64,000 nucleotides of DNA from Styela clava. Taxonomy: Eukaryota. A program made the position numbers and the translations under genes. Positions within the stretch are counted from its first letter, which is position 1; each line of letters opens with the position of its first letter. The stretch is from positions 16,616,001 to 16,680,000 of the forward strand of contig NC_135263.1 of the NCBI RefSeq assembly GCF_964204865.1. Direction: 5' to 3'. Shown here in pieces: positions 10,830 through 18,489 of the stretch. The notes under the pieces were generated by a model. It did no database searches. It saw only the letters and a list, made by a program, of their open reading frames with translations, and was not told where the DNA came from.

Positions 10830-13800
10830 ATGCTGGACTTTTTGCTTGTTGAATATTTCGAAACGACCGAAGTTTGTGTGATTCCTTCGAACTGGCTTTA
10901 TATTTCTTCCACTAATAACTACAGAAGTTATTTTCCTGAAATACAGGCTCAGAAAGTATTGGAAAGTTACGCAAAGGCAAGAGTAAACCCTAGAAAAAAT
11001 TGGCGTTTATTCAACTGTCGAATTCTATTTCAAGCAGGTCAGTCGTATTTGGATTTGGTTGAAGATGGCATTTTTATTCTGACCCGCTTTCGTACATTTT
11101 GAGAATCATTGACAGAATGACAGTTAGGATTTTGTAACCATGACAATGCTATGACGTTATGACAGTATTGTGTACTTGGGGGTTTATAGCAGTTTAATTA
11201 CAGCTTTCAGTCTAGGATACTTCTAAGAGCAAAATGACATCATTGGCATTACATTATTCCGATGACAACATGTAATGTTTCAGTGATTACTGGCACTGAA
11301 GAATCTCGAATGGTGATAAATCTGCAGCATATATTTATCAGTTGAATTTGTTGTACACTTTTGCATAGTAATAATTTGACAAAGCAAATTAATTTATTTT
11401 TTCAATTTTTTGGCATTCACTCACAGATGTTATCATATTTTTTCAGATGACTATGGAAGCTGTGAAAACTTTTTGGAAATGATGACCGTAGATAATATGT
11501 CGGAAGAAGAAGATTATGAAGTTGAAGGTTTGCTATTACATGTTTAAATAGAACCTAGAATACATTGAATGTTAATGTCATTAATTTGACAATGAAAATG
11601 ATTTTGAATAATACTAGAAGATGATTCACAAAATAAGACCATTTACTGAATGAAGTATCATTAAGTTATCTGACATTGATTCACCCTTACATGGTAACTT
11701 CATTCAAATGTTTTTCATTATGTCATGGAAATTACTGTTTCTGATCTATCAATATCTATATTCTTCTTATTAAAAGTAATTTTGCAGTACTAACTTTAAC
11801 AATTGAGCAGAACTTAACAAAAATGATCATGTTTCAAGATGATGTTGTAGTATCAGAACATCGAGAAAATGAATCGAAATTGATTAGTGGAGAAAAGTCA
11901 TCCAATGTTGCAGAAATTGTTGAAAGTAAGAACTCTGCTTAATTTAATCAAAGTAAGGAACCTTCTGGTTTCATGCGTGAGAATGCTCTTTTTAGTTAGT
12001 GATTATTTTGGTGTTAAAAAATATTGCTTACCTAATTGAAACGCAGAAGATTTTTGGTTGTGTATTTTATTGTAATTGTTTTAAACAGTACAAACCTATG
12101 ATGCTGTCCTAGAGGTGCCATCAATTGATGTTCCAGAGCCTGCTATAGAAGTGGAACATGAAACAATTAAAGTCACCAAAGTTTATCAATTGTTCCCATC
12201 TAATAAAACAGGTAATAACAGTAATGCAATTAATTTTGTATATATAATACCTCTGTGCTGTGAAAGTACTTTATTGGAAATTAAGCTTTTAAAATTATTT
12301 CATCAAGTCATTTTTTATCCCTAATTCTATTCAATCACCATCTAATAAAAATGGATGCGGATTGCAGATGATATTCCCATCTACTGGACTCAAAACTTTG
12401 CAGCACAACACACGAGCACTTTTCAGGGGGTCGCACAACAAAATGATTTTACATACGGCATTTTTCTATAAAATCTATCCTAATCAGTGGTGGAAAAAAT
12501 AAATTTGTTTACAGGTGGAAAAATTAAAAAGACAAACAATGAAAACTAATTTTTGAAGTTTTGGGTTGATATATATAAAAAAAAGCAAAATTCCTCCCAT
12601 AAAACGGCAAATTTCCTTCCTCTGAGTATTTCTTTCTCGGTTGGGAAGCATTGCCATAATTTTCAATTTGACCACTTGTGTGTTGGCTTAATATTGAATT
12701 AGAAACTTTGCGGTAGCGGCAGGAAATATTTGTATAGCTGTGGCAGCTTTAAAATTTCATTAAAATGTTTTACATTTTCTGTTTAATTTGAGTGTTGCGT
12801 GTAAACAACTGTAGAGCCCTCGTGTTCTAATTCTAATATCATTTCAATTGCTCCTGTGTGAATTTGGAGTCCATGGCAAGGCAAACTTTTTATGAAATGT
12901 GAAACATGAAAGTACGAGTTATGTATTTTCATTGCCGTATTTTACGGTACTGCCCAGACCAATTTTGTTTCCCTGTATTTTGGTCGAATGTTAGTCCACC
13001 CAAATAATCTGACCCCAGCAAATCAGGTTAAAAATTGTGACGCAAAAAAGGTTGGGAACCACTGCATAGAGCAAATATCATGCTAACAAGTTAATAGACT
13101 AAGTGCTCCCTATGTATCTTATGAATATATATTGCTAAAGTCACCTTAAAATCCTTACACAAGTCCCCTTCATGTTTTTATATAATGTAAATAGTAGGTT
13201 CCATCAGGAATGAATGAACAGTTGTGTTTCATTTTTATAATAACATTTTGATAAAGATTTATAGACATTCTTTTATACATCATAGCCCGATTTTGAGTAA
13301 GTTTCGAGTATGTCATGTGAATAACATGCCCTATGTCAACTAATGGCTGAGTCCGAATCCCATGCTCACCACTTCACTCTGGATATGATAAATCGTTAAT
13401 GCTGACTGGAAAGATTCTGGTTTCTCCAAAAGAAATAGCTCATTATGTGTCAGTTTCTGCTTCACAGAGCTGGTATGACGAGGGCTTCAGTAAAAACTTT
13501 GTTTTGTTTTTCCAAGAACAAACAACTTCTACTGAGCAAGAGTTGGTGCAGTCACCACCAACTGCCCTCCAGGAACCATCTGTGTTTGCAAGAAAAATAG
13601 AAGCCACCACCAATGTCGATCAAACCTCTATTGCTAAAGAGTCAGGTATGATCATTGATTTTGTTAAGTTTTGTCAAATTTTCCTTCCGAGCTCTCTATT
13701 TGATGTGAAAAGTTGATTTATTTCCTCAATTTTCATTTTGTTATTTATATAACTGTTTTACATTTTTAGAATATTTTATACTTTTAGACTGTATACCTGC

Positions 13801-16800: not shown

Positions 16801-18489
16801 AAAGGCATACCAAACGAGAAATCAGGTGAGAACGTGAATTATGTATGTTTTTTCATAATCCTATACTTGGGTTGAATCCGATAAGATCTTACTATGTTTA
16901 TCAAGGGTTAAGAACCTTATACAATCTTATTACGGCCTAAGAGAATACAGAAAATTGTAGTCAAATTCACTCATTGAAGAACAAATATGTATTCTACATT
17001 TAAGTAGGGAAAACTCGCTTTCCGCTCTCGGAGAAACTCTGCTATGTTTAAATACTAGAGTAACATTTGAGGGTAGGGCAAAGAACAAACATTCAAATGA
17101 CACTTTTGTGTATATAACAGGTGGCAGGTGTGTAATGATTTTCGACCCATTTGGTACCTTATTATTTTATAAAAGTTCTCCTGAAAAACCATTTCTAGTT
17201 CGTTTTTTCTTGCCTTTACCTTAAGTCTTATCTGGACAAGAACAATGCGAGAAAAAAGAAGTCTGGAAGAATTTGAAAAAACCAAAACGACCTTGTGTTT
17301 ATTGTGGTAAATTACGAGCTCGGGTGGAGAGACATTTGCATACAATCCATGCACAGGAGGATGCAGTAAAAGAAGCATTAAAGTCAAATATAAAAGAAAA
17401 AATGAGGAAATTTGATCTTTTGCGCAAGGAAGGAATATACAGGCATAATTTGAAAATGATTAAAGAAAACAAACCAATAGAGGTCGAAAGACGCCAATAT
17501 AAATCTCAAACAGATTTAGACAGTTTTAAAATATGTGTTTCATGTCATGCGTTTATTGCTAGTAATGGTATCTCGGGTCATATGAAGAATTGTTCATCTT
17601 TGAAATCCTCTGTTGAAAATAAATCTAAATGTTTGTTACCTGCCTCTGTTCTCGCCCAACAGAGAAATGAAAATGATGTGGTTCTATTTATAACAACGAC
17701 AGGTGAGTAAATATTTGGTTTTGATGGGTAATTTGGCTTTGCATAAAAAATTTGTGATGTTTGTATTGTTGCAACGACCAATGCTCGGGTGCTGTGTGTA
17801 GATTTATTGAACCTTCACCATAGATTGACTCTAGGTTTTTGATTGCCGCCACATAAGACCTATTACCTAAAACCATCTCTACTGGCTATAAAGAGTTTGC
17901 AGTGTTCGATCCTCATCATACACTGTGTTATATTCAGACTCTTCTACTCACAAAGATGACATAGGCGAGAATACATCAGAGCGGAACTCACTATCAGAGA
18001 AATTGGAGGGTGTTCGAAAATGTTCAGGTCGTAATAGTAGAGCTCTTTATATAACAATTTCATCTGTATCTTGTTAAATCAGTTGCATTACTATTTCATA
18101 ATATTACCCTATTTTTTTTATTTAAGATGATCAAGCTAGTAAAGATTTATGTGCAATACATGTAATTCTCAGGTTCAAAGTCTTATTTCCGGTGGACAAA
18201 AGCTGATCAGGAGAAAGTGTTGAAGTATTTCCAAGAAGCAGTATGGGATTTGTCTGAGCGAGGAACGAAAGGATCATTACCTGGTTATTATCTAATGCAG
18301 TGTCTTTTATTATATTGAAAAGTTAATTGATGTGCACATTTTTATTTAGGAAAATGCGAGATAGAGAACTTCTTACGCAAATATCCAAAATTTCTTAAAG
18401 ATCTAGAGCCAAACAAGAAGATATCTGTTGTTAAAGCGAAAATTTTTAATGAAAGAACAAAGTTTCGTGAAAACCACTTTATGAAATGA
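10830..18489 (+). CDS. 12-exon gene, ~1024 aa: N-terminal VEF/VVPxxW-type domain, 3x Cys/His domain (Crypton-like), C-terminal Myb/SANT-like domain
   Basis: Exons 10830-11037, 11447-11527, 11788-11925, 12089-12211, 13517-13645, 13788-14534, 15388-15513, 16121-16825, 17226-17702, 17938-18027, 18173-18283, 18350-18489. All introns are GT-AG and phase 1, all internal exons are multiples of 3, and there are no stops. Confidence 0.8.
12425..13064. mobile_element. Decayed hAT MITE in intron
   Basis: The right end aaaaaggttgggaaccactg is a typical hAT TIR. The left end is degenerate. Confidence 0.4.

What the first reader, a model, noticed from the sequence alone, without database searches (positions are those of the whole stretch)
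10830..18489. Intact host gene apparently assembled from transposon modules: triplicated Crypton-like Cys/His domain plus Myb-like tail, no recombinase
Seen: a stop-free 12-exon model with three copies of KKPKRPCxYCGKxQxxLxRHLxxxHAQEDAVKEAL...FxLLRKEGIYxHNL...KxCVxCxAFI.....HxKxC, ending in RWTKADQEKVLKYF...GSLPGKCEIENFL...VKAKIFNER. Recalled knowledge: a similar Cys/His domain before, and a W-x-LPGK-x Myb/SANT-like domain after, flank the tyrosine recombinase in CryptonV-type element proteins. Inference: the catalytic core was lost and the putative DNA/chromatin-binding parts were amplified, giving a domesticated nuclear regulator or a dominant-negative repressor of the parent transposon. No TIR/TSD encloses the gene and its introns have collected TEs, as expected of a resident gene.
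Basis: partly seen in the sequence, partly recalled or inferred. Interest (0 to 1): 0.8.

Follow-up and report, generated by a model that had tools for sequence, protein, structure and literature searches.

The report
Transposon-derived zinc-finger gene, recombinase lost
A sea-squirt gene that is transcribed and spliced is built from the two outer, probably DNA-binding, parts of a tyrosine-recombinase transposon protein, with the front part copied three times and the cutting enzyme in the middle gone; it is a likely but unproven case of a host reusing transposon parts.

Summary
Window 10830-18489 (+) is a single-copy, 12-exon gene of Styela clava. RefSeq already lists it as LOC120341162, "uncharacterized protein". 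All 11 introns are GT-AG and phase 1.

Seven junctions, plus the exon 4/5 junction seen as a loose end, appear in spliced contigs of three studies. None appears in a DNA run.

Three exons each carry a two-finger Cys/His module. All eight candidate metal ligands are kept in every copy.

In this same genome that module heads roughly 600-980-aa proteins with a tyrosine-recombinase core. Those proteins end in the same three-helix tail as this gene. The last three exons of the element (90 nt, 111 nt, final exon; all phase 1) match the gene's. No trace of the recombinase is left in the 64 kb.

The repeats are old (dS above 1) and diverged under constraint (dN/dS 0.24-0.30). Relics of the sister element subfamily carry stop codons.

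The tail folds like a homeodomain rather than a clear Myb/SANT domain. The Cys/His module has no Pfam family and no solved fold.

Not shown: any orthologue outside S. clava, present-day constraint (7 synonymous against 19 nonsynonymous listed variants), function, or the "CryptonV" label. The scan has noted Crypton-like elements elsewhere in this genome.

The parts
10830..11037 (+). Exon 1: start codon and a 69-aa N-terminal domain of unknown kind, single copy in the genome
   Evidence: 68 of 69 residues identical to RefSeq X1. The RNA contigs run 416-541 nt upstream of exon 5, which needs an exon of about this size. The newest RefSeq record omits it.
11447..11527 (+). Exon 2 (81 nt, phase 1-1), acidic linker
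   Evidence: 26 of 26 residues identical to X1.
11788..11925 (+). Exon 3 (138 nt with the outer acceptor; RefSeq X1 uses an inner in-frame acceptor, exon start 11839)
   Evidence: My data do not decide between the acceptors.
12113..12211 (+). Exon 4 (RefSeq X1 starts it at 12089; skipped in isoform X2)
   Evidence: (loose end of the RNA contigs maps to 12180-12209).
12408..13036 (.). Dispersed repeat inside intron 4
   Evidence: dozens of copies on other chromosomes at 69-86% identity.
13517..13645 (+). Exon 5 (129 nt, phase 1-1), linker
13788..14534 (+). Exon 6: Cys/His module 1 (core about 14039-14353) with the flanking N-terminal and post-finger stretches of the element protein
15388..15513 (+). 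Exon 7 (126 nt, phase 1-1), linker
16121..16825 (+). Exon 8: Cys/His module 2 (core about 16348-16659)
17226..17702 (+). Exon 9: Cys/His module 3 (core about 17276-17593). It ends at a donor where the element's open frame would run on into the recombinase. Skipped in RefSeq isoform X4.
17938..18027 (+). Exon 10 (90 nt, phase 1-1), same length and phase as the element's third-last exon
18173..18283 (+). Exon 11 (111 nt, phase 1-1): first helix of the tail up to the LPG codon. Same length, phase and intron position as in the element.
18350..18489 (+). Exon 12: helices 2-3 of the tail and the stop codon

Best explanation
This is a resident, single-copy, transcribed gene of Styela clava (RefSeq LOC120341162). 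It arose at DNA level from an integrated copy of a Crypton-like element, meaning an element whose only enzyme is a tyrosine recombinase.

Shown:
- The element's big exon encodes a Cys/His module followed by the recombinase. Its 5' part (about the first 200 codons) is present three times, as three separate phase-1 exons.
- The recombinase-coding part is gone.
- The element's last three exons, which encode a three-helix homeodomain-like tail, are kept with their lengths, phases and intron positions.
- A 5' part not found elsewhere in this genome or in the element proteins I compared (exons 1-5, tested with exon 1 only) supplies the start codon.

Inferred: The product (about 1000 aa) cannot cut or join DNA. 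It most likely acts as a nucleic-acid-binding protein, using six small zinc knuckles and one helix-turn-helix-type domain. Because every exon is symmetric, isoforms with two or three modules can be made. I take it as a host DNA-binding regulator whose targets are unknown. Control of related elements is a less likely sub-case.
For: Spliced form: seen in 3 of 3 RNA-like runs from three studies and in 0 of 1 DNA run. There is no intronless second locus in the genome.

Gene model: the 12-exon frame is open, with 11 of 11 introns GT-AG and phase 1. RefSeq models of the same locus exist.

Copy number: exon 1 and both tail exons each match one place in the genome.

Homology of the Cys/His module: element ORFs of about 520-620 aa in this genome begin with it. 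The 8 candidate ligands are invariant in 8 of 8 aligned sequences.

Homology of the tail: a profile built from 5 element proteins alone hits the gene's tail at 4.8e-21 in a set of 231 proteins. tblastn of the tail against an element copy gives 2.3e-4, split at the same place.

Shared gene structure: the phase-1 intron after the LP codon is shared. The element's 90-nt and 111-nt phase-1 exons match exons 10 and 11.

Loss of the core: the recombinase part of three element proteins finds nothing in the window, best E 1.3.

Age and constraint: between repeats dS is 1.06-1.60 and dN/dS 0.24-0.30. The three repeats form one clade at 100/100 support. The sister relic copies L004 and L011 each carry a stop, and L006/L025 is split over several frames, while the gene's 1016 codons are open. 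Exon indels between individuals are multiples of 3 in 2 of 2 cases, intron indels in 0 of 4.

Predicted folds: module pLDDT 88.6, two beta-beta-alpha knuckles. Tail pLDDT 86.5; 14 of the 16 top structural matches are homeodomain-type DNA-binding domains, Z 7.0-5.8.
Against: No orthologue was seen outside S. clava, so conservation is not shown.

The listed coding variants are 7 synonymous to 19 nonsynonymous, roughly pN/pS 0.75. That gives no sign of strong present-day constraint. Fifteen further variants were not shown, and five of those listed sit in one divergent haplotype at 18203-18227.

The low dN/dS between repeats could in part date from a time when the repeats were still inside an active element.

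The runs are labelled RNA only by a guess.

Exons 1-3 were not checked on reads, and the newest RefSeq record drops exon 1.

The fold matches are below the level the tool calls safe (Z under 8), and no DNA binding was tested.
Confidence: 0.6

Rival explanations
1. It is a transposon repressor. The protein keeps the element's targeting domains without the enzyme, and blocks or competes with the recombinases of related Crypton-like elements at their DNA sites.
For: The architecture is binding parts only, with the core removed. S. clava holds a young element family with near-identical copies (tree branches 0.01-0.17) that such a factor could act on. Tandem amplification of the same module has happened independently in many animals.
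Against: The gene's modules are only 31-42% identical to those of the three living element families sampled. Its own sister subfamily is dead (stops in L004 and L011, broken frame in L006/L025). No binding site or element end has been defined.
Confidence: 0.2
2. It is a transcribed but functionless remnant: an old internally deleted element copy, fused to upstream exons, that is drifting and will decay.
For: No orthologue was found. Listed variants are 7 synonymous to 19 nonsynonymous. The tail's first helix differs at 5 of 36 residues between two assemblies.
Against: 1016 codons stay open although the repeats are separated by dS above 1, while less diverged relics of the sister subfamily have stops. 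All 24 ligand positions are kept. Both exon indels are in frame. dN/dS between repeats is 0.24-0.30. Canonical splicing is seen in three studies.
Confidence: 0.15
3. It is still part of a mobile element: a non-autonomous, deletion-derived Crypton that full-length relatives move.
For: Non-autonomous Crypton derivatives are described (PMC3212892, passages seen). The element family is abundant here.
Against: Outside the locus itself, the whole 7.66-kb locus matches the genome only through an intronic repeat and two 161-167-nt relic pieces at 80-81% identity. Exon 1 and the tail exons are unique. There are no enclosing repeats. The repeats are old.
Confidence: 0.03

Closest known systems
Crypton-derived animal genes with DUF3504 (KCTD1 long isoform, KIAA1958, ZMYM2/3/4, QRICH1, WOC); Kojima and Jurka 2011, PMC3212892 (abstract and passages seen)
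   Same: Host genes made from the protein of a tyrosine-recombinase DNA transposon, with catalysis lost.
   Different: Those genes keep the recombinase-derived domain (DUF3504). This one has lost that part entirely and keeps only the flanking modules. No DUF3504 hit was found in the gene or in 0 of 30 element proteins. Those genes are conserved across vertebrates or bilaterians. This one has been seen in one species only.
Yeast Msn1/Hot1, derived from CryptonF elements and sharing only the GCR1_C DNA-binding domain with them (PMC3212892, passages seen)
   Same: A precedent for a Crypton-derived gene that keeps a terminal DNA-binding domain and not the recombinase.
   Different: The Crypton lineage is different (fungal), the domain is different (GCR1_C, absent here), and there is no tandem amplification.
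The Crypton-like element proteins of S. clava itself (RefSeq LOC120330366 and LOC120348272; P0001, P0003) and their homologues in scallops, oysters, a crinoid, sea urchin, sea cucumber and brittle star
   Same: Same Cys/His module (31-42% identity), same tail, and the same last three exons and intron phases.
   Different: They carry one module and a full recombinase core. Some also carry an N-terminal SET domain. The gene has three modules, no core, and a different N-terminus.
Multi-module proteins of other animals: zebrafish si:cabz01015814.1 (5 modules), Astyanax, hake, Littorina, Saccostrea, Capitella, Plakobranchus, Elysia (9 modules), Anneissia
   Same: Tandem arrays of the same two-finger module.
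   Different: In each protein placed on the tree the modules group by protein; in the crinoid protein they fall into two separate pairs. The arrays are therefore independent amplifications, not orthologues. Many look like gene models over element copies. None has been characterised.
CryptonV (Kapitonov and Jurka, Repbase Reports 2012; known to me only as a citation in PMC8869645)
   Same: An animal Crypton group.
   Different: No CryptonV sequence or description was available to me. Its stated hallmarks (found in cnidarians, inserted in microsatellites) were not tested here.

Membership tests
Gene derived from a Crypton-like (tyrosine-recombinase-only) element | Its domains are homologous to domains of proteins encoded by such elements | tested here: met
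   The Cys/His module matches element ORFs in the same genome at E 1e-23 to 1e-18. The tail is hit at 4.8e-21 by a profile built from element proteins only and at 2.3e-4 by tblastn. The exon structure is shared.
Gene derived from a Crypton-like (tyrosine-recombinase-only) element | The source proteins are tyrosine recombinases | tested here: met
   Pfam Phage_integrase hits 11 of 30 element proteins at E<=0.01 (best 1.2e-5, all below Pfam's own cut-off). The best PDB hit is XerA, but only at E 0.1. Arg-Arg in the NARRGGEP stretch, Arg-His in MRHR, two His and the Tyr of NVYQ are invariant or at least 90% conserved in 30 proteins. That these positions are the catalytic ones is recalled knowledge of the family, not a test.
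Gene derived from a Crypton-like (tyrosine-recombinase-only) element | The elements lack reverse transcriptase (which separates Crypton from DIRS/Ngaro) | tested here: inconclusive
   Three element loci of 8-10 kb have no other long sense ORF. RefSeq element proteins show no RT domain in Pfam. The element ends were not mapped.
CryptonV group | Similarity to Repbase CryptonV sequences; insertion into microsatellites | not testable with these tools
   No Repbase is on hand. Only a citation was seen. Flanks of two copies show satellites with 37-294-nt units and no microsatellites, but the ends are undefined.
DUF3504 / CryptonA-derived genes | Presence of the DUF3504 domain | tested here: not met
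   No DUF3504 hit in P0221 at E<=1, nor in 0 of 30 element proteins at E<=0.01.
Myb/SANT domain (tail) | Sequence match to a Myb/SANT family, and a three-helix fold | tested here: inconclusive
   No Pfam Myb/SANT hit at E<=1. The predicted three-helix bundle matches homeodomains best (Z 7.0-5.8, rmsd 1.8-3.2 A), with Myb/SANT-type domains lower (GT-1 5.1, ARR1 5.0, Chd1 5.0, TBF1 4.7). All are under the tool's safe level of 8. Foldseek finds nothing at E<=0.001.
Classical C2H2 zinc finger (each knuckle) | Cys-Cys...His-His/Cys ligand pattern, beta-beta-alpha fold, Pfam zf-C2H2 match | tested here: inconclusive
   The ligand patterns C-x2-C-x9-H-x4-H and C-x2-C-x11-H-x3-C are invariant. The model shows two strand-strand-helix units. 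Sequence and fold hits to single fingers are only weak. The whole 130-aa module has no Pfam family and no solved match (best Z 4.0).

The most novel reading that the evidence does not exclude
The two-finger module plus homeodomain-like tail is the DNA-targeting gear of a large Crypton clade of marine animals that I did not find described in the papers I searched; part of that clade also carries a SET domain. Hosts have repeatedly cut this gear loose from the recombinase and multiplied it into arrays (sea squirt, fish, molluscs, annelid, crinoid). That would give a transposon-born family of multi-finger DNA binders that police the very elements they came from, a recombinase-transposon counterpart of the zinc-finger arms races known for retroelements. 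The Styela gene would be the first case with transcript support.
Probability: 0.15. Interest if true: 0.75.

Novelty: new variant of a known kind. Interest (0 to 1): 0.5.

Why it matters
The animal genes known to come from Cryptons all keep the dead recombinase domain. This one shows the opposite outcome. The enzyme was thrown away, and the two flanking modules were kept and multiplied, with the element's own phase-1 exon structure making that possible.

It gives an unnamed, widespread two-zinc-finger module (1007 hits at E<=0.001 in the representative library, no Pfam family, no solved fold) a concrete, expressed, non-mobile example to study. It also gives a candidate DNA-binding reagent for finding what these little-studied elements recognise.

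If orthologues and binding sites are found, it becomes a clean model of how a transposase's targeting parts become a host factor. If not, it is one more lineage-specific transposon-derived gene.

Tried and rejected
Pfam on the three repeat ORFs, exon 1, the RefSeq protein and 60 module sequences gave no family above cut-off. CpG_bind_C appeared in 2 of 60 at E<=0.01, and clearly (1.9e-13) only in the zebrafish array. I do not treat it as the family.

PDB sequence searches found only weak single-finger hits for the module and nothing for exon 1. Foldseek and VIA gave no whole-module match.

The Atlas offered only small unnamed arthropod clusters at 0.92-0.93 for residues 1-75 of the RefSeq protein, a lead only. 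For the tail it found no named cluster.

Orthologue search:
- The word search with the RefSeq protein returned only the gene's own cluster.
- Exon 8 alone returned nothing.
- The representative library gave no close hit besides the gene itself; the next best is 34% identical.
- This absence is weak. The S. clava transcript contigs seen are themselves not in that collection, and few styelid data may be held.

Polymorphism as a test of constraint: 26 listed coding variants are too few, and 15 further variants were hidden.

An enclosing terminal repeat or duplication was not found.

The idea that the three repeats came from three separate insertions is rejected. They form one clade at 100/100 support and share exon phase. 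With three partial relic copies added, the six rows form a 99/99 clade whose inner order is unresolved, so a triplication already in the parent element is not excluded.

Papers:
- PMC3212892, PMC5753468, PMC8869645 and PMC9004415: passages only.
- All other papers: search listings only.
- I found nothing in print on this gene or on a Crypton with these flanking domains.
Additional file 1 of PMC3212892, which lists Crypton sequences, could bear on the family label.
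Full report
WHAT IS THERE.
The window is chromosome piece C18:16616001-16680000 of a 377-Mb genome. Names attached to database proteins identify it as the ascidian Styela clava. Between 10830 and 18489 on the + strand there are three long ORFs: 13919-14563, 16168-16875 and 17273-17710. At DNA level the three copies form direct-repeat families of 227 nt (73-77% identical) and 78 nt (68-72%).

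An alignment of the three copies with five element copies from the same genome shows eight invariant Cys/His positions. They are arranged as C-x2-C-x9-H-x4-H and C-x2-C-x11-H-x3-C.

THE GENE MODEL.
I rebuilt the exons from the sequence and from read joints, and checked them one exon at a time. The exons are 10830-11037, 11447-11527, 11788-11925, 12113-12211, 13517-13645, 13788-14534, 15388-15513, 16121-16825, 17226-17702, 17938-18027, 18173-18283 and 18350-18489. All 11 introns are GT-AG and all are phase 1. Every internal exon is a multiple of 3, there is no stop in any exon, and the total is 1016 codons.

TRANSCRIPT EVIDENCE.
I laid contigs of three runs from three studies (X1, X5, X6; labelled RNA only by a guess) and one DNA-like run (X10) on 12600-18590.
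- All three of the first kind hold one 2.6-2.9-kb contig that skips the seven introns from exon 5 to exon 12, with GT..AG ends.
- X10 covers all 30 bins and has none of these joints.
- The odd ends reported for the 14534/15388 joint are explained by a variant next to the donor. The net skipped length, 853 nt, is the same in all three runs.
- The contigs continue 416-541 nt upstream of exon 5. Their loose end maps to 12180-12209 in exon 4 with one mismatch.
- The genome holds no second, intronless copy, so the spliced form is a transcript and not a retrocopy.

COMPARISON WITH REFSEQ.
RefSeq already annotates the locus as LOC120341162, "uncharacterized protein", with isoforms of 1007, 966, 927 and 848 aa. 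Each of my 12 exon pieces maps in order onto the 1007-aa isoform, with these differences:
- RefSeq uses an inner acceptor for exon 3 (exon start 11839) and an outer one for exon 4 (12089). Both are in frame.
- Isoform X2 skips exon 4, and X4 skips exon 9, which is module 3.
- The newest record starts inside exon 2.

LINK TO A TRANSPOSON.
The module matches 29 places in the genome at E<=0.001. Several are single ORFs of about 520-620 aa in which the module is followed by a region with the conserved stretches NARRGGEP, MRHR, GHS and NVYQ.

In 30 homologues these Arg, His and Tyr positions are invariant or at least 90% conserved. Pfam Phage_integrase hits 11 of the 30 at E<=0.01, all below Pfam's own cut-off. 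DUF3504 hits none. The best PDB sequence hit is the recombinase XerA, but only at E 0.1.

The three element loci I looked at hold no other long sense ORF, so I call the elements Crypton-like. I did not map their ends.

RefSeq models of two S. clava copies, and homologues from a crinoid and a sea urchin, show the full protein: an optional SET domain, the Cys/His module, the recombinase, and a C-terminal stretch that matches the gene's tail motif by motif. Homologues occur in scallops, oysters, a crinoid, sea urchin, sea cucumbers, a brittle star and many unnamed marine contigs.

HOMOLOGY OF THE TAIL.
- tblastn of the RefSeq protein against an element copy finds the tail in two pieces, at E 2.3e-4.
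- The pieces are split where the gene is split. In element copy L016 the codon after Leu-Pro is cut after its first base by a GTATGT...TAG intron, exactly as at 18283/18350.
- In copy L018 the last three exons are 90 nt, 111 nt and the final exon, all phase 1. The gene's exons 10 and 11 are also 90 and 111 nt, phase 1.
- The 3' end of the gene is therefore an element's 3' end with its introns, which points to a DNA-level origin.

LOSS OF THE RECOMBINASE.
tblastn of three element proteins against all 64 kb matches only their first 170-211 residues, three times over. The recombinase part gives nothing better than E 1.3. Exon 9 ends at a donor (17702) where the element's frame would run on. The intron that follows is 235 nt.

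IS IT MOBILE OR RESIDENT?
Exon 1 and both tail exons each match one place in the genome. The whole 7.66-kb locus finds only three things:
- itself;
- a dispersed repeat inside intron 4 (window 12408-13036, 69-86% identical to dozens of copies);
- two 161-167-nt pieces of relic modules at 80-81% identity.
No inverted or direct repeat encloses the locus.

AGE AND SELECTION.
In a 70-row tree the three modules form one clade with 100/100 support. The modules of the multi-module proteins of other species likewise group by protein (in the crinoid protein as two separate pairs), so amplification happened independently many times.

When three partial relic copies are added (L004, L006, L011), the six rows form a 99/99 clade whose inner order is unresolved. 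These relics have no intact recombinase nearby. L004 and L011 each carry a stop, and L006/L025 is broken across frames with a remnant of the region that precedes the recombinase.

Between the gene's modules, nucleotide identity is 63-68%, dS is 1.06-1.60 and dN/dS is 0.24-0.30. The relics differ from each other by dS 0.24-0.46, with dN/dS 0.39-0.65. So the gene has kept 1016 codons open over a divergence at which its dead sister copies broke. I read that as selection for the frame. I cannot say how much of that selection acted while the repeats were still in an active element.

EVIDENCE AGAINST STRONG PRESENT-DAY CONSTRAINT.
- Of 26 listed coding variants, 7 are synonymous and 19 are not, against about 539 synonymous and 1961 nonsynonymous sites, which gives roughly 0.75. 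Fifteen further variants were not shown. Five of the listed ones belong to one divergent haplotype at 18203-18227, which is also the RefSeq allele.
- On the other side, the two indels in exons are 3 and 6 nt, while none of the four intron indels is a multiple of 3.
- The window and RefSeq X1 differ at 22 residues. None is in exon 9, and 5 are among the 36 residues of exon 11.

ORTHOLOGUES.
None was found. The representative library gives only the gene's own cluster as a close hit, and the next best is 34% identical. The word search with the RefSeq protein returns only that cluster. Exon 8 alone returns nothing.

WHAT THE DOMAINS ARE.
The module has no Pfam family. A model built with 60 sequences has pLDDT 88.6. 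It shows a strand-strand-helix knuckle, a long helical hairpin, and a second strand-strand-helix knuckle. Foldseek finds nothing at E<=0.001, and the wide VIA search peaks at Z 4.0. Only single fingers resemble Sgf11, CEP104, TRAF, RAD18-UBZ or CHHC fingers.

The tail model was made from an 82-residue stretch of the stored RefSeq protein, aligned with ten element and array proteins. It has pLDDT 86.5 and three helices. Foldseek finds nothing significant. In the wide VIA search 14 of the first 16 rows are homeodomain-type DNA-binding domains (Z 7.0-5.8, rmsd 1.8-3.2 A over 53-68 residues). Myb/SANT-type domains come lower (Z 4.7-5.1). All are below the Z of 8 that the tool calls safe. The last helix carries the nearly invariant Lys, Asn, Glu and Lys positions. 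That an Asn/Arg-rich third helix is the DNA-reading helix of homeodomains is recalled, not tested. "Myb/SANT-like" is therefore right about the fold class and unproven about the family.

Exon 1's 69-aa domain has no Pfam, PDB or own-genome relative. The only lead is a set of small unnamed arthropod clusters in the Atlas.

HOW IT MOST LIKELY WORKS.
Shown: the protein has no recombinase, so it cannot move DNA. What it keeps are the parts that flank the enzyme in the element. Inferred: these parts are the element's nucleic-acid-recognition gear, and the gene product is a multivalent DNA binder whose valency can be changed by skipping symmetric exons. I put a host regulator of unknown targets first (0.6), a repressor of related elements second (0.2) and a drifting remnant third (0.15). 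The low identity to the living families (31-42%) and the death of the sister subfamily argue against the repressor reading. The missing orthologues and the variant counts keep the remnant reading alive.

COMPARISON WITH WHAT IS KNOWN.
Crypton-derived animal genes in print keep the recombinase-derived DUF3504 domain. Fungal Msn1/Hot1 keep only the C-terminal GCR1_C domain (PMC3212892, passages; PMC9004415, passages). This gene works like the second kind, but comes from another Crypton lineage and carries an unnamed module in triplicate. CryptonV is known to me only as a Repbase Reports citation describing target-specific elements of cnidarians (PMC8869645), so membership is untestable here. Searches for the gene name, for CryptonV, for Crypton with SET domain and for Crypton with Styela clava found nothing on this gene or on this domain set.

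EARLIER NOTES OF THE SCAN.
Two notes describe dead Crypton-like arrays elsewhere in this genome. They agree that such elements live in S. clava. I did not test whether they belong to the same family.

VERDICT.
The transposon origin, the loss of the core, the triplication, splicing and single-copy status are supported. The family label, the Myb call, the function and host-level selection remain open.

Noticed in passing
L018:191-898 (SET exons) upstream of L018:2835-4847; proteins P0001, P0034, P0051, P0086: Some members of this Crypton-like family encode a SET (histone-methyltransferase-type) domain in front of the Cys/His module and recombinase. This is seen in S. clava and a crinoid by Pfam (9.6e-12 and 4.3e-06) and, by the sources' own names only, in a sea cucumber and a sea slug. 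A paper search for Crypton plus SET domain found only two general reviews.
   Followed up: partly
Proteins P0082-P0098, P0101, P0110 and others: Tandem arrays of 2-9 copies of the same two-finger module occur in zebrafish (si:cabz01015814.1, 5 near-identical copies, clear Pfam CpG_bind_C hit at 1.9e-13), Astyanax, hake, snails, oysters, Capitella, sea slugs, a crinoid and a planthopper. 36 of 47 multi-module proteins held here show no recombinase core. In the proteins placed on the tree the copies group by protein.
   Followed up: partly
L007, L008, L010, L027, L028 (G000 C19, C10, C14, C17, C13): One Crypton-like family of S. clava has near-identical copies (tree branches 0.01-0.17), some with long open frames, so it may be active or only recently dead.
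   Followed up: no
window 18203-18227: Five differences within 25 nt in DNA run X10, changing the first helix of the tail. The same allele is in RefSeq X1, where 5 of the 36 residues of exon 11 differ. This looks like a divergent haplotype in the domain's most exposed helix.
   Followed up: partly
window 12408-13036 and G000:C5:117555-167622: The repeat in intron 4 has a 150-nt part that recurs about every 3184 nt in a long tandem array on chromosome piece C5.
   Followed up: no
window 10830-11037: Exon 1 encodes a 69-aa domain with no relative in Pfam, PDB or this genome. The Atlas lists only small unnamed arthropod protein clusters at 0.92-0.93.
   Followed up: partly
L018:4600-5644 and window 10830-18489: The four 3'-most introns of the element gene in L018, the only ones I inspected, are phase 1, and so are all 11 introns of the host gene. 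This symmetry lets exons be duplicated or skipped without breaking the frame.
   Followed up: yes
window 1-6000: Strong strand asymmetry of composition (GC skew down to -0.34, AT skew -0.36) at the start of the window.
   Followed up: no
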